A stretch of 64,000 nt of DNA, taken from assembly GCA_019828565.1 (NCBI GenBank), contig JAHDYR010000067.1:170723-234722 (forward strand), given 5' to 3'. Under the pieces are notes generated by a model. It worked only from the letters and a program-made list of their open reading frames with translations, did not search any database and had not been told where the DNA came from. Below, one piece after another: positions 25,306 through 61,017 of the stretch (position 1 is the stretch's first letter; the number at the start of each line of letters is the position of its first letter). Source of the stretch: Carpediemonas membranifera BICM (taxonomy: Eukaryota > Protista > Fornicata). The position numbers and the translations under genes were made by a program.

Positions 25306-25448
25306 AACGTGGAATACTAGTATTGTGGTTCGTTTGACGAACTATGTTTACAAGAGGAGAAGACTCGACACAATGGTGTCGAGGAGAAACTCCTTGACTA
25401 ACTAATATCATATATAAATCTGTGTAATCTTGGGTGAGACCCATGACA

Positions 25449-25963
25449 GCGCCAGTGATAGCCGCTAGGGCTCGGGTCTGTTTTTGCAAGACCGAGGGCC
25501 CTAGGCCCTTTACGAAGCACTTCCCCGCGTAGCGAGAGAAGTTGTCGCCGGGAGTACTGTCCTCAGGTAGATCTTGGAGTAGGTCGTCATCGTCTGCCAG
25601 CTTATCGAAGAGTTGGAGGCGGGTACGCACGGTGGCGGCGTGTTGGCGGGTGATGCTGAGGAGCGCGTGAGGGCCCGGGGTTGCTGTAGGGGCCTTTAGG
25701 GCGGCTAGGTCCTTCGTCAGTTGTAGGACGTCATCAGGCATAAGGCGCTGCTCCACCCAGGCGATGAACGCGTCCAACTTGATGGTAGCGGGGTCATGGT
25801 CATCCGCTTGTAGCTCTAAACGCGTTGACGGGGAAAGGAGGATGCTTAAGGGGAGTTTCTTGTGAGTGTCGAGGAATATTGTGGCTTTGGCCTTGAAGTC
25901 TTGGAGGGACTCAAAGGTAGCTGTTTCGGTATCGATTGACGGAGTTTCAAACGTCAGGGACAT
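25449..25963 (-). CDS. Element A gag N-terminus
   Basis: ATG 21 nt after the 5' LTR; continues in frame at 19406 once B1 is removed. Confidence 0.9.
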
Positions 25964-26047
25964 CGCAATGACTAGTATTAATACTGTGAAGCGAACTGTT
26001 TATAGGTAAACCGTCTAAAGGTAAAAATGGTCTAAACTACCGTGACA

Positions 26048-26417
26048 ATAGGCCATACATAAGGTTTGTAGGTCTTCGGCGATCTCCGAATCAGGAATCT
26101 GGATCGATGAAACCCCTTCTGCCACGTCCTCAGCGGTGTTCGTATCAAGATACTTGCTTGGGAAGGGGAAATCCTCTGCGGTATCCTTCTCGTCCGCCTT
26201 CAGTACAATATGTAGACCCTCATCGGTCAATAGACCGAGGCTTCTCAACGTGGCGCAGCCTATTAGTATCTTCTCGCGGCCACTTGGCAGCACCAGGAAA
26301 GTCTGTTCGAAGCGCACCTCCCTGTCTCCAACCTGGGGTAGCGTCACGGTCACAGTCAGGGTTTTGGTTACCTTGACCAGGGCGTTGCTCGCAGTTCTAA
26401 TAAACCTACGCGTGTAG
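26048..26417 (-). pseudogene. Ty3/gypsy protease-linker fragment G, the target of element A
   Basis: ILIGCATLRSLGL; joins across A to about 15610-15647 as LCMAYEDVFDPQLP. Confidence 0.8.
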
Positions 26418-26564
26418 TTCTCTTCTATAGCTTATCGCTGGTGAGCTTAGACACATTGGCATTCACTTTCACGTTCATCCAGGGGAAAATCCAAGTGATC
26501 ACTGTGGTGGAATCCTTGTGTCTTTATAGTGCGAATTCTACAAACTAATCAACATCATAACACA

Positions 26565-27054
26565 GGCCTAGCGCTTGGGGCTGCCGCTGACCCACGCCAC
26601 CTAACCGGGGTAGACTCCAGAGACTCGGCGACTTTCCCCGCCTTCGGGTTGGTCACTTAACAGGGCCGCAGGGGGCACGGATCAGAGGCAACTAGAAAGA
26701 TGAGAGAGTGTTGTGACTGAACGACCCTACAGGGACCGCAGGGAATCAGGGACTGCTATAGAGAGGCCTTGCAGGACGAACCTGCCTGTCACGGGCTCCG
26801 AGGACAGACCCCCAGACTCCCTGGACAGTTGCCGGACTCCCAGGGAGGCAGGAAAGCAGAGATGCACGGAGAAGGCCGAAGGGCCTCTGGGGCGATTGGA
26901 ATCACCTGTCAGCAGACGCAGTAGGTAGGAATGAGCGCTGCTGACTAGCTCAGGACAGGGATTAGGCCGTGCCCCGGAGCACTCAGCTCCAGGATAATGG
27001 GAAAGCAAGCTCAGTCCGGGGCCTGATACCAGGCAAACGTAAATTTCTTTCTTT
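26565..27054 (+). mobile_element. SINE-like copy of the LINE 3' region
   Basis: Collinear similarity to 50240-50751; ends in a (CTTT)n tail. Confidence 0.75.
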
Positions 27055-27857: not shown

Positions 27858-30752
27858 TCAGCGATGCCAACGGTTTTGATTATCACTCAACTCCGCCAAG
27901 CTGAGCCGGTCCTCCTCGTCTGGCCCAGCTCCATCGCCCACACCCAACACCTCTTCTCCCCCACTCTCAGCCCCCGACTCGACTCCAGAGTCAGGGTCGG
28001 AGTCGTCGGAGTCCCAGCCGACAGCAATTTCGACGCCCTCCAACAACACGCCGACTGACGCAATAAGTCCAGCGGCGGTGGCATCAGAGTGGATGGGAAC
28101 CAGGCTTCCTTCGATCTTGGCCACCAGGCTGTCGACTGCCTTGGCAGTCATCTTCTTGACCGTGATGTGCTGGAGAAGGTTCTGGAGAGATTGGATCAGA
28201 GCTTGACCGACAGGCTCCTTCATCTTCTTCTGGAGGGCGACGGTGACCATCTTCTGAACCGCATTCCAAACAAATTCGAACGAATCTGCCAATTCCAAGG
28301 TGATCTTCTCGATCAAAAGAAGTGGAACCACAGCGAAGGCGCTGACCTTGTGGATGCCCATCATGATATGCCCAAGGGAGGCGCACACGTCGCAGCAATG
28401 GTCTGCTTGCAGCGTGTCATGCTCGGCCTGGTTGATCGTGACGTCGAGGAACTGCCGGAGAACGACGCTCTTGATGACTCCGCGGTCAGTCTCGCTGAAG
28501 CTGGTGGATCTCAGCAAGGCGAGCACTGCCTGGCGGGCCACAGGTCCCAGTGGGTTATGCTCGCCGCACGAGAGATGGACGAGCAGAAGACTGTTGGTAA
28601 GACGCGCGAATAGACCGCTACGGTCGGTCAGGGGCCTGTAGTCTGGCGGCACGGCCCGGGATAGGATGAGCGTCGTCACTGCTGAGATGAAGTGCTGTCT
28701 GTTGCCGTCGACCTTGGAGCCCTCAGTCGTGCCGGGGAGGCTGAGGGGTGACACAACTGACTGCCAGAAACGGAAGGTGAACTTATACTGGGGGTCGAAA
28801 ACATCGTGATCGGCCTCATCGATGAGAGAATGGAAGTCGTCAAGACCAATCTTGACCACAAGGTCTAAAAGTGCCCGATAGGCGACGATCTGCTGTTTCT
28901 CTTCCCGTCCATTGGCAGCAACCTCCATAATCGACCGGACGATGTCCTTCTTACGGTAGTCTATGTCGACGACGGCCAGGCCGCAGAGCAGCTTGAAGGC
29001 CTCAACCCCACCCCGGCCGTGGGCTGCGATCATCGCCTGGCATTGCTCCAGAATGGGCCTGGCGCTGTACAGGGTGGCCTCGCTGTTCTCCACCGGGAAT
29101 GACCGGATGACCTTCCAGGCGACGTATGCGGCCTCCAAGGTGGAGTCCGGCGTGTTGAACTCTGTGGCTCTGGCGGCGTAGTGGGCGAGGAGGGCGTTGA
29201 GCAGCTGCCATAGCTCGGAGTCCCCGTCCGGACTCGGGAAGAGTCGGCCGAGGGCCCGCATGACGGCCCTGATGTCTGTCCGGCACCCGTCCCTCACCAT
29301 GACTCCGGCAACCCGAGCCACGCGATGCTGGACCGCTGGGTCTGGTAGCATGCCCCACAGGGTGACTGCTATGTCGATGCTCACTAGCAGCAGCTGCTTG
29401 ATGGTTGTCGCGGCGGCCTTATGCTCGTCGGGGTTGTCGAGCCGCATGAGAAGCGCTTCCATGTAGCTGAGCATCGTCTCCGCATCGAGGTCGTCATCAG
29501 GGTCGAGTGCCCAACCCCGACAGTCGAGCAGACCCTTACGTTGCGCCAGTGTGATCGAGATCTGGATGAGCACGAGGACTAGGCGATCGTGCAGTTTAGC
29601 ACCCTGCGTACACGCCCGAATCCCCAGAGCTGCGCCAGAAGTCAGGGTAGTCACGGCTCTCTGGTCAGCGGTGGAGAATGCTGCGAGAACAGCCCAGCTC
29701 GGGTCAGATTCATTCAATTTCGCGGGATCTGAAGGAGATACAATCTGGCACCACCGTTCCACGGCGGCGCGGTCAGGGTTTCTGTTCTTAGTGGAGGCGT
29801 TGGCATGCTGGTGTGTCAGCTCAATGATGGCAACGATTGCTTCCCTCGCCTTGTCCTGCACCCTCTGTTCCTGGTCGTTGAGGGCCGCGTGGAGGAATGC
29901 CGTGAACGCCTCCGGTGTGACCTGGGGTCTGTCGTGCTGGAGTGAGGCGGGGTAGAGCTTCAGTCTGACCATGACGTCGATGGCCTCGGCCCGCACCTTG
30001 GGGTTGGGGTGTCCGATGGCGCCAAAGACAGTGGACACGAGGGCTTTGGATGCCTTGTCAGAGTCGGCAATGTCCTCTGGGTCGTCCGACTCTGGCGATG
30101 GCCAGAAGAGGCAGCTGAGCACTCTCTTGCACACGCCGTCCGCCTGGTCGTGCCGGAGGAGACGGCAGAGTGTGTGGACGTCAGCGTTGGAGGCAAAGGA
30201 AGCGAATAGGAAGACTGCCTCCTCTCTGACGACGGGGGAGATGTCCCTGAAGCAGGCGTGGGCAGTGTTGTAGATCTCGTTGGTGGCCTCCTCCACACTT
30301 TCGTCCATTTCTTCGAGTTCAACTAGTTCAGTGACGATAGCTGAAAGCGTCTTGAAGGCTGCCGTGCGCACAGAGGCGGCGTAGCGATCGGTGTAGCGGA
30401 GGAGATAAGCAACGGTGACCGTGAGGAGGTCTGCACAGGAGATACAGGCGATGCTGACGAGCTTGATGCATCGTTGCATCGCCTTGTTCACAGATTTGCT
30501 TGCGAGAATGTGCTTGAGGCACTGGCAGTACGGCTTCACCTTGCTTTCGTCGAAAGAGCTACTAGAAGCTCCCATCTCCGCCAAAAGCAGATCTCTGGCC
30601 TTAATGATGTTCTGGTTCGTCTCTGCCTGTCTAAAAGCTTCACAGATTCCGTGGATTCGATGTTCGTCGTGCACCATCAGAATTTTGATGGTTTTTGGCT
30701 CGGCGACTTCCTGGCGACTTGACCATCGAGGGCAAGCCCCATGTCTCGCCAA
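27858..30752 (-). CDS. Condensin subunit CAP-G/Ycg1-like HEAT-repeat protein (start uncertain)
   Basis: About 960 aa; HEAT motifs D..ASVRTAA, RDISPVVREEAV and RHDQADGV; acidic tail. Confidence 0.65.
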   Translation of the reverse strand: MARHGACPRWSSRQEVAEPKTIKILMVHDEHRIHGICEAFRQAETNQNIIKARDLLLAEMGASSSSFDESKVKPYCQCLKHILASKSVNKAMQRCIKLVSIACISCADLLTVTVAYLLRYTDRYAASVRTAAFKTLSAIVTELVELEEMDESVEEATNEIYNTAHACFRDISPVVREEAVFLFASFASNADVHTLCRLLRHDQADGVCKRVLSCLFWPSPESDDPEDIADSDKASKALVSTVFGAIGHPNPKVRAEAIDVMVRLKLYPASLQHDRPQVTPEAFTAFLHAALNDQEQRVQDKAREAIVAIIELTHQHANASTKNRNPDRAAVERWCQIVSPSDPAKLNESDPSWAVLAAFSTADQRAVTTLTSGAALGIRACTQGAKLHDRLVLVLIQISITLAQRKGLLDCRGWALDPDDDLDAETMLSYMEALLMRLDNPDEHKAAATTIKQLLLVSIDIAVTLWGMLPDPAVQHRVARVAGVMVRDGCRTDIRAVMRALGRLFPSPDGDSELWQLLNALLAHYAARATEFNTPDSTLEAAYVAWKVIRSFPVENSEATLYSARPILEQCQAMIAAHGRGGVEAFKLLCGLAVVDIDYRKKDIVRSIMEVAANGREEKQQIVAYRALLDLVVKIGLDDFHSLIDEADHDVFDPQYKFTFRFWQSVVSPLSLPGTTEGSKVDGNRQHFISAVTTLILSRAVPPDYRPLTDRSGLFARLTNSLLLVHLSCGEHNPLGPVARQAVLALLRSTSFSETDRGVIKSVVLRQFLDVTINQAEHDTLQADHCCDVCASLGHIMMGIHKVSAFAVVPLLLIEKITLELADSFEFVWNAVQKMVTVALQKKMKEPVGQALIQSLQNLLQHITVKKMTAKAVDSLVAKIEGSLVPIHSDATAAGLIASVGVLLEGVEIAVGWDSDDSDPDSGVESGAESGGEEVLGVGDGAGPDEEDRLSLAELSDNQNRWHR

Positions 30753-33284: not shown

Positions 33285-33291
33285 GTGGATC

Positions 33292-35044: not shown

Positions 35045-35124
35045 TGTGGCGTTTCCTGTCTCGTTGCTCCAGTGAGTTTTGTCAGTTTAAACCACTTCAC
35101 CAGTTCTTGCCTTGATTCGGCACA

Positions 35125-35744
35125 ATGTCGACATTATCGGAAATTGAGGTACCTGTTGTTGACGATGTTGCATCCACTCATGTTAAGGAGGATCTCGTCA
35201 CTGTCATCGAGAGTTCTGCGCCCACCAAGTCCGTCGATTACTTGATGGGGCAGATAGATGCCCTTCGTCAGCAACTTTCATCCTCCGTTGTGTCCACTAC
35301 GCCTGCCGTGCCGCTCAGCTCTCTAAAGCGCCCCCGTTTCGGGCAGGAGCTTTCGAGCCTGAGCCAGGATCATTGGCGGGCATTCTTGGCGGCTTACGAA
35401 CGCCATGTGCTCCAGTACCCAACTGCTGAGAGCATCCTCTCCAACCTTGGCAAGTGGTGTCACCACTTCGCCCTGGACACCCGCTTCGCGCCCTTGGTGC
35501 AACTGCATGCCGCCTGGAGCCTGCGAGCGGCTGTTCCACCTACGACGATCGCCAGCCTGGCAGCCGAGTTGGCAGTCTGCCAGGAGGACCTTGCCACGGT
35601 CAAGAAGACTGTGGCAGCGGCCTTCGCCGTGGAGGACCCTACACTTCTCCTCCGTCAGCTCGGCCAGAAGGGCACCGCCCTCTGGACTGATAGACGCTGC
35701 CCCCACGAGCTAGCAACGCAGGTCGCTTGGGTGGCCGCCGAACA
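35125..35744 (+). CDS. Element D gag N-terminus
   Basis: ATG directly after the LTR; rejoins in frame at 43739. Confidence 0.88.
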
Positions 35745-36286
35745 TAGCATCTGCCGAAGAACTCGTCCGACTGCAGTGCGACAAGCGACTCCAGGACATG
35801 TATGCGTCCTTTGGCCTCAAGGAGTCATCGGACCCGTCGCAGGTCGAGCAGCTGGTGGACACGGGGGGCAACCCACTTGCCATTGTCACGATGGAGGGCA
35901 CGATGGGTCCCAACAAGTGGACCAACCTCGGCAAGAGCCTGACAGAGTGCTGTGGGATGATAATGCAAGGCTCTACGTTGATCCGCGTGACCAACCATGG
36001 TAATAGACTTGATCAGCACGCTCATGGGATGCCTGCTTCCGACAAGAGGAGTGTTGACTCGTTCGTGGAACGCACCCGTGTGTCCGTGCGCCGTGAACGT
36101 GCGGCAAAACGGCCTAACGTCACCCGCATCAGGCAGAAGTTGATGATTATCCGCCATTACAACCTTCGTTCTTTCACGCTGGTCAAAGAGATCAAGGAAA
36201 CGAGGACCGAGATGCGTAAGGAGAAGAAAGCCAACTTCTGGGACAGTGAATGGAATATTTCCGTTGAGGATGACGAAGAAGTGTAA
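35745..36286 (+). pseudogene. 5'-truncated hypothetical ORF at the left edge of the insertion
   Basis: The frame of ORF 35798-36286 stays open back to the junction (ASAEELVRLQCDKRLQDMY). Confidence 0.55.
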
Positions 36287-36310
36287 ATGAAATGAAAATA
36301 AAACAAGAAT

Positions 36311-37072
36311 TTATAGCTCCTGTGCCGAACACTCTAAGTAGTAATTCATGATGGCTTGGTATACCTTGCGACGCAGCACATCACGCGATTCTGCCTCAGC
36401 ACGTTCCGCATTCCGCTTGGCAATGACAGAAGTGAGCTGACTGAGTGTCTTAGCCTCCTTCTTCAGAACTCTGGTGGGTCTGGCGAAGATGAGATCCGCG
36501 TCGCGGTCACGGCAAGGCTTGCTCAGGACGAGCTTGACGTCATCGACCGTCACACCGCACGATGAAGCAGCGAAGGCATGGACCTTAGCCCGGTAGGCGA
36601 TGGGAATGCGGTGAAAGGCATCATCCATCTCGCGGACAGTCGCGATGAGTGGGTCGTCCGTGTCCAGCTCATCTGTCTGGGCGTCAAGACTGAGGAGAGC
36701 CTTGAAGCGGTGACGCTTGTCCTCATCACCGCCTCCCTGCCACTTGCGGCTGATCTCTTCGACCGACTGGAGATTGCCGTAGAGCTTGTCCTTCTTCAAG
36801 GAGGCTACTTTCATTTTAGGGACCTCGGCGGCAAACTTCTGGCTGAAGTCGACAACCCATCCGTTTGCGCGGGTAATATCGTCATTATTAAGGAGGAAAT
36901 TGCTGATAAAGGTCTGAACGATCTCAATGGGCGTCTTGTGAGCTTTTCGGGCTGTTTTCGTGGACTTGTTGGACTTGCTCTGGCTCTTTTGCTGCGCTTT
37001 CTTGCCAAGAGCCATTCTCCTCTCCTTTTGAGCTTCAGTGGCCTGTATATTGCCTTGTTTACTTCTTGCCAT
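36311..37072 (-). CDS. Basic helical hypothetical protein
   Basis: 253-aa ATG ORF with a Lys-rich N-terminus, convergent with 35798-36286. Confidence 0.7.
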   Translation of the reverse strand: MARSKQGNIQATEAQKERRMALGKKAQQKSQSKSNKSTKTARKAHKTPIEIVQTFISNFLLNNDDITRANGWVVDFSQKFAAEVPKMKVASLKKDKLYGNLQSVEEISRKWQGGGDEDKRHRFKALLSLDAQTDELDTDDPLIATVREMDDAFHRIPIAYRAKVHAFAASSCGVTVDDVKLVLSKPCRDRDADLIFARPTRVLKKEAKTLSQLTSVIAKRNAERAEAESRDVLRRKVYQAIMNYYLECSAQEL

Positions 37073-37147
37073 CGTTGTTTCCTTAAAATGCGTGTGAAAA
37101 TGTGAAATGAACTGTGACTCTCGACATTGCTGCGCAGCTATGGTATT

Positions 37148-37470
37148 CCAACGGCACAGAACGGGTTTATAGCATGCATATGATCCATTCTGGTGCCTTT
37201 ATCCTCTATAACCAACATCAGTCCATCAAAATGAATCTTGCAACAGAATACTCATCCACACGCATCGAGAACGAAAAAGAAGCATATAACCAACATCAAC
37301 AACCTAATAGAAGGCTGCATGCAAGCGTAGAGCTCTCCTAGTCAATTCTTCATTTTCACCACCATCGATCTCCACGTCAGGATGAAACCGTGCGCCCAAA
37401 AGCTCAGAGATGCCGTTATAGATGATATAACGACGTCTCTGAGCTTTTCAGCGATTTCAGTTTCTGGCCA
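37148..37470. repeat. 322-bp repeat, copy 2
   Basis: Matches 1337-1658; hairpin at 37398-37448. Confidence 0.95.
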
Positions 37471-37751
37471 TGGATAAGCTACAAATCCTGTCAATGTTGT
37501 CCTCAGAGGACACTGAAAAATTTAATCTGTGTCCTCTGAGGACCAAATTGACAAAATCGAAAATGGAGCGATGAGATGCCCATCGAAAAACGGCCAAAAC
37601 AGCGCAGGTGCAGAATGAGCTGAAAATCGGCCAAGGGGTAGCTCTTGGGTCTTTATGGCTGATCGGAGGTATTTACATGACAGCTGGCAATATTTATTGA
37701 GATAAAACGTATTTCATTTTTCGAGAAAGTCTTCTGAGGACCAAATTGACA

Positions 37752-39928: not shown

Positions 39929-39954
39929 AAAAAGAGATGTTTTGACATTTTAAT

Positions 39955-40764: not shown

Positions 40765-40878
40765 CTGATTTTTTTTTTGCAAACGGACACGCGGTATTTC
40801 TCGGGATTGATGGGGCCGTCTCACACCGTAAAGGACACACATACAATATCTTATCTGTAACACCAGAATGCTTGCTTA

Positions 40879-41976: not shown

Positions 41977-41999
41977 AGTTCAAAATCTCCCTATTTAAC

Positions 42000-43221: not shown

Positions 43222-43243
43222 ATTCTCATCTTAAACTGCGCAG

Positions 43244-43471: not shown

Positions 43472-43738
43472 CACGTTATTATCACTTTGAATAAGCAATG
43501 AATGGTTATGCAACATCAGCACCTACCTACGAATCACAAGAATGCCCCTAGCACGTCGTATGCAAGCAAAAATGAGACTTACCCGTACCTTCCGCACGTT
43601 TCTCTACGTTTCACAAACGTTGGTGAAACGTGTGAAATAGTGAAAAAGATACGGGTGAATCTCATTTTTTCTTGCAGTTTCTTGTGCAAAAGGGTGTTTA
43701 TCCTCCGTATATCCCCGGATTAACTGGCCATTCTAACA

Positions 43739-46700
43739 GTATGACGACACTCTCCACCGCTGGCTCGACCCTTCCGACCGGCTGCCGAAGCGTGCAGTCC
43801 TGCGGTCCTTCGAGTCATCCTGCAAGAGCGCGGCCCCACACACGGTACGTGCGGTTCTGGAGACCCTAACGGCCCTCCAGAAGTATACGACTGTGACCGC
43901 GCTCGCCACTGACCTCGTAAGCGAGCTCCGCGCCCTGGAGGTCGCATCAACACGGGCCGCCACTTACGCCCACACTCCCACACAGCCCAAGGTCCAACCT
44001 CCGGCTGCCACTGTGGCACCACCTGCCACGTCAACCTCGGTCGCCCCGTCTGCCGCTACAGCACCCAAGACGCCCGCGACCACCCGCACGCCCACTCAAC
44101 CGAGACCTCAGGGCGCTGCCAAAGCTACCCACGGCCCTAGAGCCCCAGCATCGAAGGGCTCGAAGGACGATTCAGCGGTCTCAGCCGCGTTCGCCGCAAG
44201 ATGGTGTGACCCTAAGAAGCCGCCATTCGAGGGGATGACGTGGTGTGATCTTCACGGTCGCTGGGGAAGCCACGAGCGTAGCAAGTGCTCGCTGGCCCAG
44301 CCTAAGATCACTGTCACCCCGACTGCGACGACTCAGCCAGCCGCCGCCACCAAGACACACCCCATGAGCCTCCGCCAGAACCCGCCACAGAACAAGTTCC
44401 CCAACATGGTCGTCCATGCGGTGGAGGCGCCTGTGAACCAGGTGGCAACCCCCGACTCTAAGCCCATCCGGGTCCACATCACCCTCAACGGGGTCCGGAC
44501 CACAGCCGAGCTAGACACTGGCGCAGCGGTCAGTTGTGTCAGCGAGGGTACGCGCGATGTTATCGCAGCTGTTTCGAAGCAGCCGACTTCCCCGGTTGGT
44601 ACCATCGACCTGAAGGTCGCCAACCAGGTGACCGTCGCAGCAGACCAGGTCCCTCTACAGCTCACCATGCCAGGTGCCAACACGACGCTCTCCCTAACTT
44701 GGAACTTCTCCGTTCTGGAAGGCCAAGGGCACTCCGTACTGCTGGGCCGGGACGTCCTCCGAGAGGTAGGACTGCTGACTGACTCGGCACTGATCATTCC
44801 GACGGAGGCTCCACCGGACGATGAAGATGATATCGAGGCGATCGGCTACCTTGGGTCCGACTCTGCCGAGCCCGCTCGAGAAGCCGAGGTCCGCATTGCG
44901 GCGGAGCTTGAGAAGGTCACTATCCCTGACGGTCCGCTTCACGACCGGCTTGTCGACCTGGTATACGAGTTCCGCGAGTTGTTCGACCCCGTCCTGCCGC
45001 CTGAGGGGTCTACCCTCACACCGTTCACACTTGAACTCGAGGAGCCTTTCACTGCCAAGGCTAAGCCGCGACCCATCAAGGGTCACCTCGACGTAATTCA
45101 GCAGGAGATCCAGCGACTGCTGGACGAGGGCATCATACGACCGAGCGTCAGCCCGGTCGCGTCCCCACACGTTCTAGCGGACAAGAAGGGCGGCCAGAAG
45201 CGCTTCTGCGTGGCCTACAACGCCCTTAACGCGGTCACGGTCAAGGACGCGTACCCGCTCCCGGACACCCGTGATTTCATCAACAGCGCATCAGGTTGCT
45301 CGTTCTTTGGCAGCCTGGACCTGCGTTCGGGGTATAATCAGATGGTCCTCGACCCTTCTGTCTGCTCCTTGACGGCGTTCGTCGTACCAGGGGGTCAGTT
45401 CGAGTACGTGCGCCTTCCTTTTGGCCTCACGAACGCCCCTGGACGTTTCCAACGTGCAATGGATGACGCCCTTCGCGGCGTGGAGGGCACGAGCGTCTAC
45501 GTCGACGACATATTGAACTATGCCAACGACGCCGAAGTGTACCTCGCCAGAACACGACAACTACTGACACGCCTGCGCCAGCACCGTCTTCGGCTGAAGG
45601 CCGAAAAGTGCACCCTTGGTGCACCCGAGACGGAAGCCCTCGGTTTCGTGCTCAACCGCGATGGCCATCGTGTTTCCGAGAGCCGTAAGCAGGCCCTGCT
45701 CGATATGCCACGGCCCACGACCATCAAGGAGCTTCGCCGAGTTCTCGGCAAGTTTAACTTCCTGGCCCGCTTCATCGACGGGCTGAGCGAGGCCGCCGAG
45801 CCGCTCCACCAACTACTCCGCCCCGAGGCAGACATCACCATGCAGTGGGGGGAGGTTCACGATGCGGCCTACGCTGAACTGAAGCGCCGCGCGACTGCCG
45901 ACACCATTCTGGCTCTGCCGGACGTCTCTAAGACCTGGATCCTGGAGACGGATGCCTCCGACGTTGCCTGCGGCGGTGTGTTATGGCAGGTCTCCGATGA
46001 CGAGTCGCGACTCCCCATCTCCTTTTTCGGGCACAAGTTCACAGAAACCCAGCGCAGATGGGCCACTGTGGACCAGGAGCTATACGGGATCATACATTGT
46101 GTTACCCGGGCAGATTTAGCTCCTCTGTTGAAGCTCAAACCTTTCCTCATCCGCACGGATCACAAGAACCTCGTCACTATGGTCATCAAGAGCGAGGAAG
46201 GCAATCGGAAGCTCACTCGTTGGCGAACGATACTAGCGGAGTACCCCTACTCCATCGAGCATGTCAAGGGCGCAGACAATGTCGTTGCCGACAGTTTGTC
46301 GCGGCCACCCGTGGTTGCGGCCGTCAACCTGTCCACGGAGGTGCGAGCAGCTCAGGCCGCCGACCCCTCGGTTTCGCGCCTGCCCACTGACGCCGACGGT
46401 CTCCACGTTCACGATGGGGTCGCCGTTATCCCCGAGGGAGCTACCGACTTGAAGGCGAAGCTCATCGCCGAGGCCCACCGCTACCACGCCGGCGCCGTCA
46501 ACACAGCCGCTAACCTACGCGCGATGGGTTTCACCTGGCCAGCCGTCATCGACGACTGTCGTTCTTACGTGAGCAAGTGTGCCCTGTGCCAGAAGGCGCG
46601 ACTCGCCCGTTTCAGAGAGTCGGCTCTCGCGTCCACCATGGTACACACACCGTTTGACACCGTCTCGGTCGACACAGTCGGCCCCCTTCACACAGACGCA

Positions 46701-47708
46701 TGGGGCAACAGGTTTATCCTGGTCATCATTGACGCATTCACGCGTTATGTGGAGCTTGTACCCATGCCCAACCACACCGCGGACTCCGTCGCAGGGGCAA
46801 TTTGGACCGCCATCATGGGCAGACATGGCCTACCAACCACAATTCGGACTGACAATGGCCCGGAGTTTGTGAACAGGGTCCTCAATGCCCTCCTCAGACG
46901 CCTCAACGTTACACACCACCGCACTCTGCCGTACCACCCGGCGTCGAACGGGATCGTAGAGCGCGTGAATTACGAGATCAAACGGCATCTCCGCCTCCTT
47001 TGCGCGAAGTTTAACACACACAGCAACTGGTCCCCGCTGGTGCCGTACGTGCAACATGTCATCAATCACTCTCGTCACTCCGCAACGGGGTTCACCCCGC
47101 ACCAACTCCTCTTCGGCTACCCCTCCGGCCTCACGTTTGTACACGAGCCGGCTGACAGGGCCGAGACCGAGCCACTGGCTTCTCTGGACGACTACATGTC
47201 CGACCTTCAGTCGTACCTTGACGGGCTGCGCGCGAAGGCGGTGGCGAAGCAGGAGCGCATCATCAGGTCAAGATCCGCTGTCACAGCGCAGTTCAAAGCG
47301 GGCGACTTCGTCCTCCTAGCCAACGAGAGAGAGACCAAGCTCCACGGTGCCATTGGCCCCTTTAAGGTGGTCAGCATAGGGGAAAACAAGGCTGTCACCA
47401 TTCAGCATCTTGTCGATTTGTCGGAGCGCACTGTCCACCAGGACAAGCTCTTTCTCTTTGACGCCGACGCCACGCTTGAGCAGATGCGAATGTTTGCCGT
47501 CGGTGATCGGGAGGAGTTCCTCCCATCCCGCATCCTGTCTTGCGACAGAGACGCTCACACATTTCTGATCGAATGGGATGGCTTCCCGGCCTCGGAGGCC
47601 ACCGAGGAGCCGATGGCCAGTCTGGCCAACCACCCCAAGGGCAAGCTAATCCTCAAGGATCTTGAGGAGGGGCAGGATGTGGCGTTTCCTGTCTCGTTGC
47701 TCCAGTGA
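43739..47708 (+). CDS. Element D gag-pol remainder: NC, PR, RT, RH, IN and chromodomain
   Basis: LDTGA, YVDD, TDASD, TDNG, NGIVER, FLIEWDGF; stop codon lies inside the 3' LTR. Confidence 0.96.
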
Positions 47709-47852
47709 GTTTTGTCAGTTTAAACCACTTCACCAGTTCTTGCCTTGATTCGGCACACCGCTTGAATCTACGCCACCGCTGGTGGGTCAGACCGTCTAGC
47801 GGGGCTGGGGCATCATGTTAGTGGTAATCGGGAACATTACTAGTAGATCTAC

Positions 47853-47955
47853 TGTGGTGTTGCCGAGGTAACACGCTGTACAAGTTTAATGCAAAACCCG
47901 CCATCGACACCAGGGTGTCGAGAGACCAAACGAGACTTAATCAAATTAAATGACA
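47853..47955 (-). mobile_element. 5' LTR of element E (about 103 bp)
   Basis: TG..CA ends, TCGACAC-N4-GTGTCGA hairpin, followed by a palindrome and the gag ATG at 47837. Confidence 0.75.
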
Positions 47956-48177: not shown

Positions 48178-50797
48178 CGGGCGTGGCTTATTCAGAGATT
48201 CCAGTCGACCTAACCGGAGACTGTCCCAGAGAACATAGTGGCTATCCCCGCCTTCGGGTAGATCGCGTAACAGGGTCGTGGGGGCATTGAAGAGTATCTC
48301 CCGGACAGAAGAGAAGATGCCTATGTCCGAGGAACGCAGAGAATCATCAGAGAATGGAGAGCGCCATAGACAAAAAGACCTGTGGGGGAAGAACCCACCT
48401 GCGAAGGTGCCGGGGACAGATTTCTACGCCCTAATAGCGTGTCGGGCACTATTAGAGACAGGAAAACGGCAACACCGTACGGAGAGAGCTGAAGAGCTCG
48501 TAGACTGATTGGAACCGAATCGAAGTCGACGCAGTAAGGTGGCTGGCTCAGAGCGTGTAACCCAGCACTGAGAGAGCCAGGAGTGCCCCGGTTAACCTTA
48601 GGCCAGGAAAATGGGAGCAAGAAGGCCCGGGGTGAGAATCAATGTTCGTGGACGATACAGCGGTCACAGGGGAGACACCGGAAAAGAGCAAGATAGTGGC
48701 GAACCTAGTCATAGAAGTTATCAAGGAGCACCTCATGAGGGCAAATGCACAAAAGAGTGAGATGATCAGTGTAGACAGGGCAGCAGTGGCGAGAGTGGGG
48801 GGAGTTACCCTAATGGCAAAAGAGGAAGCTAAGTACCTAGGTCTCTGGATAGCCAGCGGAAAAGACCCACTGGCAGCCTGTATCAGAAAGAAGCGGGAGC
48901 AGAGCGAAAGGTACAAGAAGCTAGTGAGAAGAGTGGGATGGACCAGAGGCAACATGCCGGCGCTAGCCAGCAGGCTCCTCCTCGAAGTTTACATATGGCC
49001 GAGGATAATGTTTGGAGTGGAGGTGTGGGGCTACGCAGCAGGGGGGAACAAGATATGGACGGATTGGCAGGGCATCATGGCCGGAACAGGCCCAGGTGGG
49101 GGCTCGGTCATGCGCATCTTGAACGGATGGATGGACCTGCAAGCCCACCTGGAGATGCTAGCAGTCAAGAGGATCGTGACAAGCAGGGGCCAGGATTTAC
49201 CAATCAGAGACAGGGTCTGGAAGGAGGGATCGATTATGTGGAAAGCCAGGGACTCAGTGAACGCACTCCTCAGAGGAACAAGAGAGGGAGCAACGAATGC
49301 AGGGAAGATAGACTTTGGTAGGGAGATGGTAAGAATGAACTGGACCAGGAGGTGCAAGAGCAAGACAGCGGTGGGGCTCATGGAAGTCCTAGGACCCAAA
49401 CGTATGGGAAAGTGCATGGCGGGGAAACCGGCCATAAGTAGGAAGACAGGGAAGTGGCAGTCAAGGGCAGAGTGGAAAAGGATAGTGTCGGTGGCAGCGA
49501 ATGTCAGCCCGTCTCCATCATCAGCGGAAAGGGGAGAAGGCCCAGAGCGAGCGCTGGCGGACCTGGCGATGGGTGAGGAACTCAAACACAAGATACAAAG
49601 GAGGTGCCCCTGTGCACAAAGGAGAGCGAGATAGAGTTACTGTGGCAAATAGCGAGAGAGCAGCCAAACCAAGCCAGGAAGCAGGCACTAATCAGGGAGT
49701 GGGTAAGGGGTCAGCCGCTGGGATCGGCGGCCCACATTATGTGTGAGTGCCCAGAGGTTGAAAGAGGAGATGACTGGGAAAAGATATGGAAGACAGCTAA
49801 GGAGAGGACCAGGGAATTGCAAGTCAGAAGAGGCCCGAATGGGAGGTGGTATGAGAAGAGGCCAATCTTAGAGGTGCAACAACTAGTGTTAACAGGGTCG
49901 GAAGAGATATGGGAAGGACTGCGAGCTGGGCTGAGAGCCCTGGCAAAGGTCTATGATAGCTATAGAATAGATGGATAGATAAGGAACACCACATCCAGAA
50001 AGGGGGCAGGGAAGCATAGACTCTGGGATCAAGGGGAGACCCCCCATGTTTCCCAGGGAGAGGGCAGGGCCAGGGACAGAGGAAATCCATCAATTGGATG
50101 GTTGCACCACTCGCGGTGAACCTAAGGAAACTGCAGGGACTGAGCATGGGATACGGGGGGACATGACGTCCCCGCCGCCCTTGTGAACGATAGAGGGACG
50201 CTGGGATGTGTAGCACAGGAGAACTATCATAAGGGGTACTAGGCCTTGCAGATCTAGAGTCTGTGTTAGCCCTAGCCCACGCCGCCTAACAGGGGTAGAT
50301 GAGAGGGACTTAGTTGCTTTCCCCGCCCACGGGTAGGCCACTTAACAGAGTCGTGGGGGCACTGAACAGGGAATCTGGAAAGAGGAGAGGGTGCCATGCT
50401 TGAACGACCCCGTAGGGACTGCAGGGAATCAGGGAGTGCTATAGAGAAGGTCTTGCAGGACAAACCTGCCTGTGGAAGCACCGAGGACAGACCCCCAGGC
50501 TCCCTGGAAGCTGCCGGGTTTACAGGGAGACAGGAAAGCGCTCAGCGCACGGAGATGGCGAAGGCCTATGGGGGGAAGTGAAATCGGGAGTGAGCGGAAG
50601 CAGTAGCACCGAATCGCTCGTTGGACGCAGCTGACAAGTTCAATCGCAGGGAGGAGGCAGCGCCCCGGGGAACTCGGCTCCAGTAATAAGGGAGATCAGC
50701 CTAAGTAACCGGGGCCCGATACCAGGCACCATAAATTTTCTTTCTTTCTTTCCCGGGGTGAGAATCACAGCACCATCTAAACTTCTTCTTCTTCTCT
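48178..50797 (+). mobile_element. SINE-like retroposon of about 494 bp (48178-48641 plus 50768-50797), split by a LINE
   Basis: 15-bp TSD ACATGGAAAGTAACG (48163-48177 and 50798-50812), (CTT)n tail, similar to the LINE 3' region. Confidence 0.85.
48642..50751 (+). mobile_element. 5'-truncated non-LTR retrotransposon (RT C-terminus, CCHC-like end, long 3' UTR)
   Basis: FVDD, KYLGL, HIMCECP; 16-bp TSD CCCGGGGTGAGAATCA (48626-48641 and 50752-50767); (CTTT)n tail. Confidence 0.9.
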
Positions 50798-50816
50798 ACA
50801 TGGAAAGTAACGTTAC

Positions 50817-50910
50817 TGTGGTCTGTCTTAGGACACAAAAGGTTTTCAAGACTAAAGCTCGACACTCAAAGTGTCGAGATGGACCAATAAAGACCCTATT
50901 AAATGGAGGT
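50817..50910 (-). mobile_element. Truncated 5' LTR of a decayed element F
   Basis: Ends ..CCACA on the minus strand, followed by palindrome AGTAACGTTACT; contains the CTCGACAC..GTGTCGAG hairpin; outer end not found. Confidence 0.6.
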
Positions 50911-52560: not shown

Positions 52561-54938
52561 CGTCCAGCTCGGGGTGCTCCAGGTCTACTGCAGGCGGCTC
52601 TACAGGTTGATCTCCACTGGCCGGGCGGGTACTGGCACGACCGACACAGTGGCGGCCATGCCTCTACGTCTGAAACCCCACCCCTCTTCGTCGACCTCGG
52701 TGTAGTGATTGTTTATTTGAGTTTTGTCCTCTTCTGAGGTTTACTCTAAATTCCACTTCTCCTTTGCTTCAGTGTTTCACCACAGTTATAACTGGATCCA
52801 ATGAATACCGAAGCTCTTTCCCAATTCCTGGCACCATACCTTAAGAAGACGTCCCAAAAAGCCTGGACGACATTCCGCGAGGAATACTTGGCTTATACAG
52901 CACGCGCAACAACTCCAATCCCCATCCACCAGCTCATCGCTCCCTCCGTCCTCGCAATCTTCTGCCTTCGTGATCCCCAGCTCGAAAGAGTGATCCACAA
53001 CTCCATCACTCAGAGAATCTTCGAGGCTGAAGAGGCCAACAACGAGGAACCGGGCAACCTGCTCGCTCACGACGACGCAAGCGATGACAGCGAAGGATCC
53101 GACACCGAAGAATCCTCCGATTCCGAGGAGGAAATCGTCGTTGATCCCATTCCCCACGGGGATATCGACTACAACGAGGTGATAATGAACGAGATCGATG
53201 AGATCTTCGCTCCACTCGATACCCAAGACGCTCTGGACCGCATCGCAGCTGTCTATTTCCAGCCGACTGATGACCTGTAGCAGCCTGTAATCGGCCGTAG
53301 ATTCACAGTTCACTGCGATCAGAGAAACTTGCAGTGGATGGAGACTTCGGAGAACCCAAAAGTCGTCAGGTGGCGCCAAGCCTTGGACGGATTCGACTTC
53401 AAGGTCATACACGTTCCTGGTTCAGAGAACGGCGCAGCAGATGCTCTTTCGAGAGTCGTTGCCATATCCTGCGCAGACGCCGACGCAGAAAATCACCATG
53501 ATGCAATTCAACGCGCACACTGCGCAACTCGTGGCCATCAAGGCGTTACGGCTACAATTAACCGCCTAATACAAGACAATTGCTCCTGGAAAGGCATGGC
53601 AAGCGACGTTAAGGCATTTATCAGCCAATGTCCCGTTTGTCAGCTCGCGAAGGGAAACATGAAGCCACCAGTACAGTTCAGGCATCCTACACACGGCGAG
53701 TATCCATTCCAAGTGGTACAAATCGACGCTATCGGACCTATGACGGAGATCGACGAGTTTTCCCATGCACTCGTCGTAATCGACACCTTTTCGAAGCTCC
53801 TTCAGGCATAACCGATCAAGAACACCTCATCCAGCGAGGCCATCAGAGTTCTTGACACCTTCTTTGGACACTACGGCTTCCCGAGCAGGATCTCATGTGA
53901 TGGCGCCAGCCAGTTCACGTCCAAGGAGTTCCGCGACCACGCAGACCAATGCAACATCGCCCTAGAGATCGGCACACCGTACCATCCCGCCGGCCGAGGG
54001 ATAGTTGAGCGCGCTAACCGCGAGGTTAAGAAGCATCTCCACGCGCTCGCTCTCGAGGCCGAATAACATTGGGTCAACAACATGCCCATCGCTGTAGACA
54101 TCATCAACAACACCCCATTCACTCGCTCAGGCGTATCACCGTTCCGTATGCTCTTCCACCGAGACGCACCAGTCGGCGAGCCCGACGACTCTATGGCGGA
54201 GCTGCTTAAGAAGTTCGCCGAGCAGACCACGCTGGCGAGACAGAAGCACGCAGCGCACCTTCCCCAAGCTGAACCAGTGTGGTTCGTTTGACGAACTATG
54301 TTTACAAGAGGAGAAGACTCGACACAATGGTGTCGAGGAGAAACTCCTTGACTAACTAATATCATATATAAATCTGTGTAATCTTGGGTGAGACCCATGA
54401 CACTGCCCCTCCATGCCTCAATGAGGCATGACCCCAGACAGCGTGAGCTTTGACGGCTGGCTACTGCCAGTGGGGGTGAATGTTGGCTCTTGGGGGCCGG
54501 TCCTGGTGGGTGCCAACCACCGATCGAGCCCCTTTTTTGCGACCTTGGCGGGGACACAACAAGAAGCACAACGACGTGCAAAATAGCACAGCTTACAATC
54601 GCGCGGTACCGCTGGGTTAGAAGGATCCTACCATAGGGGTTCTGCCCCTCCTCGGCTTTTCCTCGCCGAAAATCGAAATGTGACGTACCTTAAAATGCTT
54701 GGGTGCAGGTTATGGCCATCCAAGCACAACGATGGTGAAACACCGCCCCTTTCCAACTGTTTGCGCCATTAATCAGGTTGGTGCTGAAAATGGCATTTTC
54801 AGGCCTCAACGAGGCCTCTACGGCGAGATACGAGCCTTTTTCTTTGCAGCGTGAATTCACACCACGACTACGCTCAGATAGAGCTACTAAACGACTAAAC
54901 AACATCAAGACAACAATAAAGAGATCATAACTCCATGT

Positions 54939-59100: not shown

Positions 59101-59318
59101 AGTAAGACCTTCACTTCGGCCTTCTCGATGACTCCATTGACTACAGGCAACGACCCTCCACCTGACGCAGCGGAAAATAAACACTTCGCCCCGTTTACTG
59201 GGGACTTAAAACGACAGAACTTCTCGAGGTGACCCTGCTTCTTGCAAACCGGGCATGTGGCACGATCCCGCGGGCACTTGAAGGATGGATGGCCCGTCTC
59301 GCCGCAGTTGTAGCACAC
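56131..59318 (-). CDS. B2 NC-PR-RT-RH-IN-chromodomain polyprotein
   Basis: Same motifs as B1; small indels near 56495 and 56710-56755. Confidence 0.95.
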
Positions 59319-60174
59319 CAGCTCGCGCTTGCCCTCTCCTCGTTGGTTCGGGGGCTCTTGCGGCTGGCTTATCCTGATGATGAGGCTTGGCGATTGGCTT
59401 GGGGGCGGGATGGGTGGGTTCGTGGTGAAGACCGCGATGGGGTTTGCCCGACTTAGCCTTGGTTGACGACTGCTTGTCGGTCATTCCGATGGAACGCAGC
59501 ATGGCACGGGATTCCTCGATATCGCGAGCGATATCAATCACCCGCGGCATAGCCAGTTCGAGGGAGAAGCCTTCGGTGAGATCCTTAACCTTGTACTGAA
59601 CGCGCGAATTATCGGGTAGCTTAAAGCAACGCGCGTAGGTGTCGCAGAGGATCTCAGAGTCTACCCCGGGATCAACAAGGGAGAGGAGGGTTCTGAACCG
59701 TCGGTTCACTCGAACCACCTCCTGCGGAGTAAAGGACGAGATGGAGAGACGGAACAAGTCGAGACGGGCAGAAAAACGGGACGGTTGCAGTGCTCTACCG
59801 AGCCGCTTGAGGACGCGGTCGTCTTTAGCGAGACGCTTGGCCTTGCGCTTACGCTTGTGCGTCTTTCGGACAGCTGCGGTTAGGATGAGGGACTGCTGGA
59901 GGGGTTGCTCGTCGTCTTTAGGCGTTCCGGCTACTGGTGAACCTTCATCGTTCACGGGGACAGAGGCCTCGGCCGAGGGGATGGCTTCAGAGGCCTTGGC
60001 GAAGAGGTTAAAGCCGAGAGCGTCAGCGTACCGTTGGACTTCGGTGTCAATCATGTCGGCAACGTCGGCATCACCGCCTTTGGCTCGGTACTCGGACAAA
60101 TCCTCGGCGAATCGGACTAACGACTCAATGGTCGTCTTCTTTAGCATAGGCATATTGTTATAGAGCGTCATCAA
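59206..60174 (-). CDS. B2 gag
   Basis: 322-aa ORF after the 5' LTR. Confidence 0.87.
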   Translation of the reverse strand: MMTLYNNMPMLKKTTIESLVRFAEDLSEYRAKGGDADVADMIDTEVQRYADALGFNLFAKASEAIPSAEASVPVNDEGSPVAGTPKDDEQPLQQSLILTAAVRKTHKRKRKAKRLAKDDRVLKRLGRALQPSRFSARLDLFRLSISSFTPQEVVRVNRRFRTLLSLVDPGVDSEILCDTYARCFKLPDNSRVQYKVKDLTEGFSLELAMPRVIDIARDIEESRAMLRSIGMTDKQSSTKAKSGKPHRGLHHEPTHPAPKPIAKPHHQDKPAARAPEPTRRGQARAGVLQLRRDGPSILQVPAGSCHMPGLQEAGSPREVLSF

Positions 60175-61017
60175 AACGTGGAATACTAGTATTGTGGTTC
60201 GTTTGACGAACTATGTTTACAAGAGGAGAAGACTCGACACAATGGTGTCGAGGAGAAACTCCTTGACTAACTAATATCATATATAAATCTGTGTAATCTT
60301 GGGTGAGACCCATGACACCAGGCCCTCACCACGACAAGTCCATCGTCGGCAAAGCAGCCATGGTCCGCACCTACACCCGCGTAGGCTACAAGCAGCGCGG
60401 CCCCGTCCGAGTTGTTGGTGTGAGCACCAAGCCCAACACGTACAGCCTGCATGACCCGACCACGGAGACATCATTCGTGGCTCACGCAGACAGCATCCTC
60501 CAGTTCCAGGGCGACTACACCGACGACGAGCTAAAACACTGGGCGCTGAAACTCGCAAGAGAGTATGAGGTAGACCAGATCGTGGGCCACCGCACCCAAG
60601 ACGGGACCCTTCAGTTCAAGATCCGCTGGCTCGGGTACACAAGCGAGGACGACTCCTGGGAGAACTACACACGCGAGATCAACAAGCTAGAAGCACTAGA
60701 CATTTACCTTGAACAACACCCACACCTCAAGCCGACCCTGGCAGCCCAACGTAAGCGGAAATCATACATCAGATAATCGAGATTATGGGGGCTGGGCACG
60801 ATATCCGCGACATCCACGTGTGACCGTTTCTTACTTTCCGGGAACTCACAGCCTAAGTGGTAGAGCGTTGGCCTGCTGATCACGAGGTTGTTGATTCGAG
60901 TCGTATGAGATTAGGAAGGCTGTGTACTGTCGGCCTGGCACATTTGGGACGCTTTGAAGATGGCATATTGACACAGTCACATAAATAATACTTCCTCTGA
61001 ACCGCTTTTTTATTCTC

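What the first reader, a model, noticed from the sequence alone, without database searches (positions are those of the whole stretch)
25313..60193. LTR retrotransposons with a 12-bp palindrome in place of the tRNA primer-binding site
Seen: every recognisable 5' LTR is followed by a perfect 12-bp palindrome overlapping the LTR's last base, with a different sequence in each family. A AGTATTAATACT 25974-25985; B AATACTAGTATT 25313-25324 and 60182-60193; D AATGTCGACATT 35124-35135; E AGTAGATCTACT 47842-47853; F AGTAACGTTACT 50806-50817; C CAGTTATAACTG 52783-52794 (overlaps CA). None starts with TGG, and 3' LTRs and solo LTRs lack the palindrome. Known: Ty3/gypsy elements normally prime from a tRNA, while Tf1-type elements self-prime from the LTR-encoded 5' end of their own RNA. 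I see no copy of these palindromes inside the LTRs. Inference: symmetry, length and register are conserved but sequence is not. This fits tRNA-independent priming in which an RNA ending at the palindrome pairs with the palindrome of the second packaged genome, or folds back, so that its 3' OH points into U5. I do not know of a prior description.
Basis: partly seen in the sequence, partly recalled or inferred. Interest (0 to 1): 0.93.

Follow-up and report, generated by a model that had tools for sequence, protein, structure and literature searches.

The report
Palindrome replaces tRNA primer site
A whole branch of gypsy-type jumping genes in the free-living protist Carpediemonas (and in environmental DNA) carries a short, perfectly self-complementary sequence exactly where such elements normally bind a host tRNA to start copying themselves. 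They therefore probably start reverse transcription on their own RNA, which nobody has tested.

Summary
All seven 12-bp palindromes sit at the stated coordinates. For A, B (two copies) and D, both LTRs and a 4-bp target duplication prove that the palindrome starts on the last A of the 5' LTR. The 3' LTRs run straight into the duplication. F's LTR end is fixed by three other genome copies. The LTRs of E and C are single-copy and only inferred.

The window's total of 12-bp palindromes is what chance gives, so the signal is purely positional. It repeats in every intact 5' end I could reach in this genome, in a second assembly and in five metagenome contigs. Nine more distant Ty3/gypsy elements have ordinary TGG-type tRNA sites and no palindrome. 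A quick tree separates the two kinds by one branch.

Related families differ by paired changes. Neither 20 host tRNAs, the LTR nor the downstream leader holds a complement.

My best reading (about 55%) is a self-complementary primer-binding site used without tRNA, most simply through two paired genomic RNAs. It is untested.

It is not wholly without precedent. Fungal GalEa copia elements have a 10-bp palindrome that includes the final A of the LTR (PMC5445492). The scan had already noted this feature on at least eight other pieces of the same genome.

The parts
25985..26047 (-). Element A, 5' LTR (63 bp, TGTCACGG...TTCACA)
   Evidence: 100% repeat of 15648-15710. CTAT target duplication at 26048-26051 and 15644-15647.
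25974..25985 (-). Element A palindrome AGTATTAATACT. Its first base is the LTR's last A. The gag ATG lies 10 nt further on.
15648..15710 (-). Element A, 3' LTR. It is followed by the target duplication, with no palindrome.
15769..19406 (-). Element A pol (protease, RT, RNase H, integrase), cut off from its gag by the insertion of B
   Evidence: Pfam
25324..25448 (-). Element B, 5' LTR (125 bp)
   Evidence: 100% repeat of 19407-19531. GCGC duplication at 19403-19406 and 25449-25452.
25313..25324 (-). Element B palindrome AATACTAGTATT
   Evidence: The same junction occurs in every intact B copy of the genome.
19407..19531 (-). Element B, 3' LTR, preceded by the polypurine tract GGAGGGGCAG. No palindrome follows it.
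21671..24448 (-). Element B pol ORF. Intact copies encode one 1345-aa gag-pol protein: CCHC knuckle, protease, RT, RNase H, integrase, chromodomain.
   Evidence: Pfam
60193..60317 (-). Second B copy, 5' LTR
   Evidence: CCAG duplication.
60182..60193 (-). Second B copy, palindrome AATACTAGTATT
54278..54402 (-). Second B copy, 3' LTR
35045..35124 (+). Element D, 5' LTR (80 bp)
   Evidence: 100% repeat of 47678-47757. CCGC duplication.
35124..35135 (+). Element D palindrome AATGTCGACATT. The gag ATG (35125) lies inside it.
   Evidence: Identical in the other D copy of the genome (L166).
47678..47757 (+). Element D, 3' LTR, preceded by the polypurine tract GAGGAGGGGCAGGA
43893..47708 (+). Element D pol ORF (protease, RT, RNase H, integrase)
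   Evidence: Pfam
47853..47947 (-). Element E, putative 5' LTR (about 95 bp, TGTCATTT...CACCACA). It is single-copy, so its boundary is unproven. E is split by D.
   Evidence: It shares the CTCGACAC-N4-GTGTCGA hairpin with the LTRs of B and F.
47842..47853 (-). Element E palindrome AGTAGATCTACT
50817..50905 (-). Element F, 5' LTR (88-89 bp)
   Evidence: Three other copies at 97% identity end within one base of 50817.
50806..50817 (-). Element F palindrome AGTAACGTTACT. Twelve nt further on, F is interrupted by an unrelated repeat.
52702..52784 (+). Element C, putative 5' LTR (TGTAGTG...CACCACA). Single-copy.
52783..52794 (+). Element C palindrome CAGTTATAACTG (a 10-mer when counted from the LTR's last A). 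The gag ATG is at 52802.
26494..26503 (-).
   Evidence: The same 10-mer marks junctions of D-clade families (L168, L169, L172, L174).

Best explanation
The palindrome is the minus-strand primer-binding site of a distinct clade of compact, chromovirus-like Ty3/gypsy elements. It is used without a host tRNA.

Why its position matters (established knowledge of LTR retroelement replication): the inner edge of a 5' LTR is set by the point where minus-strand DNA synthesis starts. The primer's 3' end must therefore pair at this spot.

What the symmetry implies (inference): because the site is its own complement, the simplest primer is the same site in another molecule of the element's RNA. Two genomic RNAs would pair through the 10-16-bp palindrome. 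One would be nicked at or near the 3' edge of the duplex, as the Tf1 RNase H does in that element's self-priming. The freed 3' OH would then copy U5 and R of the partner.

RNase H could later trim the primer RNA down to the palindrome. The plus strand would then copy about 12 nt of it, enough for the second strand transfer.

Shown: the position, symmetry, clade distribution, paired changes, and the absence of any tRNA, LTR or leader complement.
Inferred: the dimer, the nick, and the identity of the primer.
For: 1. Register. In 7 elements (6 families) whose LTR end is fixed without reference to the palindrome, it starts on the last LTR base. These are A, B, B2, D and F here, L041 and L180 in metagenomes. 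In L031, from the other assembly, the repeat ends within one base of the palindrome's start. Chance is about 3 x 4^-5 for each family.
2. Generality. Every B-clade copy with an intact 5' end carries it. So do 9 of 9 further predicted junction windows and 11 of 14 D-clade windows. It is also present in L031 and L032 of assembly GCA_002919055.1 and in metagenome contigs L041, L043, L047, L180 and L181.
3. Controls. Nine more distant Ty3/gypsy elements with complete LTR pairs have a TGG-type site 0-5 nt after the LTR and no palindrome of 8 bp or more there. A quick maximum-likelihood tree separates 13 palindrome elements from 8 tRNA-type elements by one branch, SH-aLRT 97.
4. Paired changes between relatives:
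- AATACTAGTATT versus AGTACTAGTACT, positions 2 and 11.
- ATTA-GTAC/GATC/ACGT-TAAT.
- ATTCCGGAAT versus ATTCGCGAAT in two nearly identical elements.
5. No room for another site. The gag ATG lies 0-12 nt after the palindrome in this genome's elements.
6. No alternative partner. The longest match of 16 junctions to 20 distinct host tRNAs plus CCA is 9 nt or less, within shuffles. The LTR holds no copy longer than 5 nt and the 80 nt downstream none longer than 6. The rest of the element holds no more 7-mers than chance gives.
7. The predicted self-duplex energy is mostly -10 to -16 kcal/mol. The 10-mers are richer in G+C. The length is close to the 11-bp Tf1 primer duplex (recalled from the literature).
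Against: - No RNA or cDNA ends were available. No sequencing run was listed. Transcript start, poly(A) site, any RNA ending at the palindrome and the RNA-DNA junction are all unknown.
- A 12-bp palindrome would serve equally well as a pure dimerisation or packaging signal.
- Only 20 distinct tRNAs of an incomplete list were tested.
- Positions 1-3 (A, not-C, T) resemble the CA+NT end that integrases trim. The effective priming register may therefore differ from the full palindrome.
- A palindromic site also lets plus-strand strong-stop DNAs pair with each other. That is a cost the model does not explain.
- The tree is a quick search with long branches and few taxa.
Confidence: 0.55

Rival explanations
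1. The palindrome is only a dimerisation or packaging site, an extended-duplex version of a retroviral dimer initiation site. Reverse transcription would be primed by something not yet recognised, for example a short or imperfect match to a host RNA inside the gag coding region.
For: Palindromes mediate genome dimerisation in retroviruses. The tRNA-Lys3 binding site itself contains GGCGCC, which has been proposed as a dimerisation site in HIV-2 (PMC8096270). The symmetry and paired changes fit any RNA-RNA self-pairing.
Against: The palindrome abuts the LTR in exact register in every family. That position is dictated by priming, not by dimerisation. No other candidate site exists, since gag starts 0-12 nt later, and no tRNA match was found within 40 nt. 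In MMTV the palindromes in the primer-binding site proved dispensable for dimerisation.
Confidence: 0.22
2. Priming happens within one molecule, or the palindrome acts at the DNA level. The site could be part of a fold-back structure of a single RNA, as with Tf1 or the GalEa 'conserved hairpin site'. It could also act as a DNA cruciform or hairpin during plus-strand transfer or end processing. In that case one half might be regenerated by copying the other.
For: A small hairpin often ends 1-3 nt before the LTR's last A. Mean folding z is -1.3 over 25 junctions, against 0.0 in the coding region downstream. This recalls the U5-IR stems needed for initiation in Tf1 and RSV. Central double transversions between near-identical elements (CCGG versus CGCG) would be easy if one half templated the other.
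Against: A perfect 12-mer cannot fold on itself without a loop. No second complementary copy lies in the LTR, in the 80 nt downstream or elsewhere in the element. Both the Tf1 and the GalEa schemes need such a copy. The U5 hairpin is absent in several families.
Confidence: 0.13
3. A host tRNA, tRNA fragment or other small RNA primes each family.
For: This is the default for LTR retroelements. Only 20 distinct tRNAs could be tested, and no small-RNA data were available.
Against: There are at least 22 different sites, and none starts with TGG. A primer for a palindrome must itself contain that palindrome, which tRNA stems and loops do not offer. Matches to the tRNAs are at chance level.
Confidence: 0.04

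Closest known systems
Fungal GalEa (Ty1/copia) 'Conserved Hairpin Site' (Donnart et al. 2017, PMC5445492)
   Same: No tRNA primer-binding site. A palindrome sits directly after the 5' LTR and is palindromic only when the LTR's final A is included (ACTGATCAGT, ACTAATTAGT). It has the same A-N-T start. Its function is unknown.
   Different: It belongs to another superfamily (copia), has a 5-bp target duplication and LTRs of 138-311 bp. The 10-mer is nearly invariant across families. It is paired with a second complementary box 12-41 nt downstream that forms a hairpin. Here the sequence is family-specific and no second box exists.
Tf1/sushi-type self-priming Ty3/gypsy elements (Tf1, Tf2, Maggy, Skippy and others)
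   Same: Ty3/gypsy elements, many with a chromodomain. They are independent of tRNA. They use a primer duplex of about 11 bp made from the element's own RNA and released by RNase H. There is often a U5 hairpin next to the site.
   Different: In Tf1 the site pairs with the first 11 nt of the transcript, which are encoded in the LTR. Here the LTR holds no complement and the site is complementary to itself.
Retroviral dimer initiation sites, and the palindromes inside tRNA-Lys3 primer-binding sites (HIV-1 SL1, HIV-2 and MMTV)
   Same: A self-complementary sequence in the 5' leader that can pair two genomic RNAs.
   Different: In retroviruses the palindrome is 6 nt, sits in a hairpin loop or inside a true tRNA binding site, and exists in addition to tRNA priming. 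Here it is a perfect 10-16-mer at the priming position and no tRNA site is present.
Canonical Ty3/gypsy chromoviruses
   Same: Gag with a CCHC knuckle, protease, RT, RNase H, integrase and chromodomain. TG...CA LTRs, a polypurine tract, and a short target duplication (4 bp here).
   Different: The LTRs are only 63-151 bp. There is a single gag-pol ORF that starts 0-12 nt after the LTR. There is no tRNA site.

Membership tests
Ty3/gypsy (Metaviridae) LTR retrotransposon | Domain order protease, RT, RNase H, integrase | tested here: met
   Pfam hits in that order on the B, D and A ORFs
Ty3/gypsy (Metaviridae) LTR retrotransposon | Direct LTRs with TG...CA ends, a target-site duplication, and a polypurine tract before the 3' LTR | tested here: met
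   A, B, B2 and D: TGT...ACA ends, 4-bp duplications, GGAGGGGCAG-type tracts
Ty3/gypsy (Metaviridae) LTR retrotransposon | tRNA-complementary primer-binding site (TGG...) within a few nt of the 5' LTR | tested here: not met
   No TGG start. Complementarity to 20 distinct host tRNAs is 9 nt or less, which is chance level. Control elements do show TGG sites.
Chromovirus | Chromodomain at the C-terminus of the integrase | tested here: met
   PF00385 at residues 1289-1335 of the B gag-pol. Also present in P0001, P0004 and P0005. Not detected in D.
Tf1-type self-priming elements | Primer-binding site complementary to the 5' end of the transcript (start of R, inside the LTR) | tested here: not met
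   The longest palindrome substring in any LTR is 3-5 nt, within shuffles.
Tf1-type self-priming elements | RNase H cleavage of the element's own RNA releases the primer | not testable with these tools
   This needs RNA or cDNA end mapping. No runs were listed.
GalEa 'Conserved Hairpin Site' elements | Palindrome that includes the final A of the 5' LTR, in place of a tRNA site | tested here: met
GalEa 'Conserved Hairpin Site' elements | A second, complementary conserved box 12-41 nt downstream that forms a hairpin | tested here: not met
   The best match in 80 nt downstream is 3-6 nt, which is chance level.
GalEa 'Conserved Hairpin Site' elements | Ty1/copia superfamily (integrase before RT; RVT_2) | tested here: not met
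   The elements have gypsy domain order. No RVT_2 match was found in the genome, though that search also found nothing in its controls.
Retroviral kissing-loop dimer initiation site | A 6-nt palindrome in the loop of a stem-loop, separate from the primer-binding site | tested here: not met
   The palindrome is perfect over 10-16 nt, has no flanking stem, and no separate primer-binding site exists.

The most novel reading that the evidence does not exclude
Reverse transcription in this clade strictly depends on genome dimers. The same 10-16-bp duplex that links the two packaged RNAs would be nicked by the element's RNase H, and one genome would become the primer for the other. Dimerisation, the switch from translation to replication (the gag AUG lies 0-12 nt away) and initiation would then be one event. 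This would be a third way of priming LTR retroelements, beside tRNA priming and Tf1-type cis self-priming. It may be shared with the fungal GalEa copia elements.
Probability: 0.35. Interest if true: 0.85.

Novelty: new variant of a known kind. Interest (0 to 1): 0.72.

Why it matters
Nearly all retroviruses and LTR retrotransposons borrow a host tRNA to start DNA synthesis. The only worked-out exception is Tf1-type self-priming.

Here a deep, widespread clade has swapped the tRNA site for a self-complementary one. That points to another solution, possibly one that couples genome pairing to priming.

It also matters in practice:
- Annotation tools that require a tRNA primer-binding site, as some LTR-finding pipelines do, may miss or down-rank these elements.
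- Host defences aimed at tRNA-derived primers would not touch them.
- The system is small enough (63-125-bp LTRs, a single ORF) for a clean in vitro test.

Tried and rejected
- RNA evidence: the look-up of sequencing runs listed no run. Transcript ends and cDNA junctions could not be examined.
I worked with short junction windows instead. Three of the 14 D-clade windows (L167, L171, L173) showed no junction, probably because I mis-predicted the offset.
- E and C: no second copy exists anywhere in the genome, so their LTR ends stay inferred.
- tRNA priming is rejected on the available sample of 20 distinct tRNAs.
- A Tf1-type complement in the LTR and a GalEa-type second box are both rejected. 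A copy of the palindrome elsewhere in the element, which could cyclise the RNA, is rejected too.
- Automatic LTR calls on metagenome contigs were often artefacts: contig-end overlaps of 99 or 127 nt, or 3' LTRs cut by the contig end. I counted only junctions with a complete 3' LTR.
- P0003 (Andalucia godoyi) has no contig on record. L182 was uninformative.
- A search for copia RT in the genome found nothing, but it found nothing in its control genomes either, so it proves nothing.
- The apparent 'recombinant' copies of F's leader turned out to be the end of an unrelated repeat inserted 12 nt after F's palindrome.
- Literature: no paper holds the phrases 'palindromic PBS', 'self-complementary PBS' or their long forms. 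None combines Tf1, self-priming and palindrome.
Full report
**1. Where the window comes from**

The window is contig 67 (905,863 bp), positions 170723-234722, of a 24,237,836-bp assembly in 69 contigs. Table 1 of Salas-Leiva et al. 2021 lists Carpediemonas membranifera at 24.2 Mb, 69 contigs, N50 905.8 kb and 57.1% G+C (PMC8516963). This matches the name given in earlier notes of the scan. That paper does not mention LTR elements.

**2. The observation**

All seven sites are perfect 12-bp palindromes at the stated coordinates. The window holds 19 palindromes of 12 bp or more, and shuffles give 11-22. Only their position can be significant.

Self-comparison and boundary inspection give four complete elements:

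| Element | Strand | LTR length | LTR coordinates | Target duplication |
|---|---|---|---|---|
| A | minus | 63 bp | 15648-15710, 25985-26047 | CTAT |
| B (nested in A) | minus | 125 bp | 19407-19531, 25324-25448 | GCGC |
| B2 | minus | 125 bp | 54278-54402, 60193-60317 | CCAG |
| D (inserted in E) | plus | 80 bp | 35045-35124, 47678-47757 | CCGC |

All LTRs read TGT...ACA. A polypurine tract precedes each 3' LTR. In each element the palindrome begins on the last A of the 5' LTR, and the 3' LTR runs straight into the target duplication.

F's LTR (50817-50905) is confirmed by three other copies at 97% identity. They stop within one base of its end. E and C have no second LTR anywhere in the genome, so their boundaries are inferred from shape alone.

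**3. What the elements are**

Pfam shows protease, RT, RNase H and integrase in gypsy order. Intact B copies encode a single 1345-aa gag-pol protein with a CCHC knuckle and a C-terminal chromodomain.

The elements are very compact. The gag ATG lies 0-12 nt after the palindrome, and in D it lies inside it. No space is left for a separate primer-binding site.

**4. Generality and controls**

In this genome:
- Every B-clade copy with an intact 5' region has one perfect 12-mer. It is preceded by ..CAC and followed by the long ORF.
- Nine of nine further 400-nt windows at predicted junctions carry it.
- Eleven of 14 windows for the divergent D clade carry it.

Outside this genome:
- The closest database relatives (50% identity) lie in assembly GCA_002919055.1. 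Both show it: L031 has its LTR then AATAACGTTATT, and L032 has ..GTGCAC then AGTATTAATACT.
- The next relatives (31-32% identity) are metagenome contigs. L180 has a 91-bp TGT...ACA LTR then AATATTAATATT. L181 has ..CTAC then AGTGAATTCACT.
- A metagenome scan added L041, L043 and L047.

Controls: nine more distant Ty3/gypsy elements from the same scan have complete LTR pairs. They show TGG-type tRNA sites 0-5 nt after the LTR and no palindrome of 8 bp or more there. A quick maximum-likelihood tree puts the 13 palindrome elements and the 8 tRNA-type elements on opposite sides of one branch, SH-aLRT 97. The tree has long branches, few taxa and no root, so one origin is compatible but not proven.

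**5. Is symmetry selected?**

Related families differ by paired changes:
- B AATACTAGTATT versus L010 AGTACTAGTACT. These are transitions at the partner positions 2 and 11, reachable through a G-U intermediate.
- ATTA-GTAC-TAAT, ATTA-GATC-TAAT and ATTA-ACGT-TAAT.
- ATTCCGGAAT versus ATTCGCGAAT in two almost identical metagenome elements.

The sequence is not free, however. Across 22 distinct sites:
- position 1 is A in all;
- position 2 is never C;
- position 3 is T in 20;
- mean G+C is 25%.

The 10-mers are richer in G+C than the 12-mers. Predicted self-duplex energies mostly fall between -10 and -16 kcal/mol.

The same 12-mer recurs in distant clades. AATACTAGTATT occurs in B, L013 and L175. 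AGTATTAATACT occurs in A and L032. This is expected if only a few hundred half-sites are allowed.

The A-N-T start resembles the CA+NT ends that retroviral integrases trim (recalled knowledge). The true priming register may therefore lie a few bases inside the palindrome.

**6. Alternative partners**

- I fetched 40 tRNA genes, which gave 20 distinct sequences and 19 anticodons. With CCA added, the longest complementarity to 40 nt of 16 junctions is 9 nt or less, inside the shuffled range.
- No LTR holds more than 5 nt of its palindrome. The 80 nt downstream hold no more than 6. The rest of the element holds no more 7-mers than chance gives.
- Tf1-type priming needs a complement at the start of R. 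The GalEa hairpin needs a second box. Both are therefore excluded.

**7. Mechanism**

The inner edge of a 5' LTR is set by where minus-strand synthesis starts. The primer's 3' end must therefore pair at the start of the palindrome. Because of the symmetry, the primer ends with the palindrome's own right half.

The simplest source is the same site on a second genomic RNA. In this scheme two RNAs pair over 10-16 bp and one is nicked at or near the 3' edge of the duplex. That RNA's 3' OH then copies U5-R of the other. RNase H can later remove the primer's own R-U5 once it is paired with the new DNA. This leaves about 12 nt of RNA for the plus strand to copy as the site for the second jump.

All of this is inference. 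No sequencing run was listed.

The main rival is a pure dimerisation or packaging role. It explains the symmetry but not the exact register or the lack of any other site.

**8. Comparison with the literature**

No paper in the library uses the phrases for a palindromic or self-complementary primer-binding site.

Donnart et al. 2017 describe something similar in fungal GalEa copia elements (PMC5445492):
- They have no tRNA site.
- A complementary box lies 12-41 nt downstream.
- The authors could not assign a mechanism.

This is a real partial precedent, in another superfamily and with a different architecture.

Palindromes inside tRNA-Lys3 primer-binding sites have been discussed for dimerisation in HIV-2. 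In MMTV they were found dispensable for it (PMC8096270).

**9. Verdict**

It is a clade trait of a Ty3/gypsy lineage found in Carpediemonas and in environmental DNA.

tRNA-independent priming on the element's own RNA is the best-supported reading, at about 55%. The mechanism is untested. The scan had already reported the same feature on at least eight other pieces of this genome.

Noticed in passing
window 48642-50797 (with 48178-48641): A 2.1-kb repeat with at least 16 copies at 99-100% identity in the genome. It has a strong G-over-C and A-over-T skew, an ORF with a weak match to the end of RVT_1, and a (TTC)n tail. It looks like a non-LTR retrotransposon and is inserted 12 nt after F's palindrome. 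In other copies, 48178-48641 joins directly to 50752-50797. A relative at 75% identity lies at 26591-27054.
   Followed up: partly
window 25360-25385 (B LTR), about 47895-47915 (E), about 50855-50878 (F), minus strand: The LTRs of B, E and F share a hairpin, CTCGACAC-N3/4-GTGTCGAG, in mid-LTR, although they differ elsewhere. It may be an R-region structure.
   Followed up: no
the 26 nt before each 5' LTR end, e.g. window 25328-25342 (B), and loci L010, L019, L022, L157: A 4-6-bp hairpin often ends 1-3 nt before the LTR's last A, with different stem sequences in different families (GTTCG/CGAAC, GTTCAA/TTGAAC, TAGCC/GGCTA, CTCCT/AGGAG). Mean folding z is -1.3 over 25 junctions, against 0.0 downstream. 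It is absent in several families.
   Followed up: partly
20-28 nt before the LTR end in most families (e.g. B TGTAAAC, A TATAAAC, D TTTAAAC): There is a recurrent TAAA(C/G/A) motif, a candidate poly(A) signal. If so, U5 would be only about 10-20 nt long.
   Followed up: no
window 36004-43736: The D copy in the window is 12.7 kb because about 7.7 kb is inserted between gag and pol. The other D copy in the genome has an open frame of 1529 aa. Part of the insert (37148-39248) is 94-97% identical to window 1337-3739. Both carry a 540-560-aa ORF with no Pfam match.
   Followed up: no
L043 5200-5360 (metagenome): Two elements lie in tandem and share one LTR. The polypurine tract is followed by the LTR, then the palindrome, then the gag of the next copy.
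   Followed up: no
window 27858-30752, minus strand: A 964-aa ORF with HEAT repeats, probably a host gene, lies between the retrotransposon nests.
   Followed up: no
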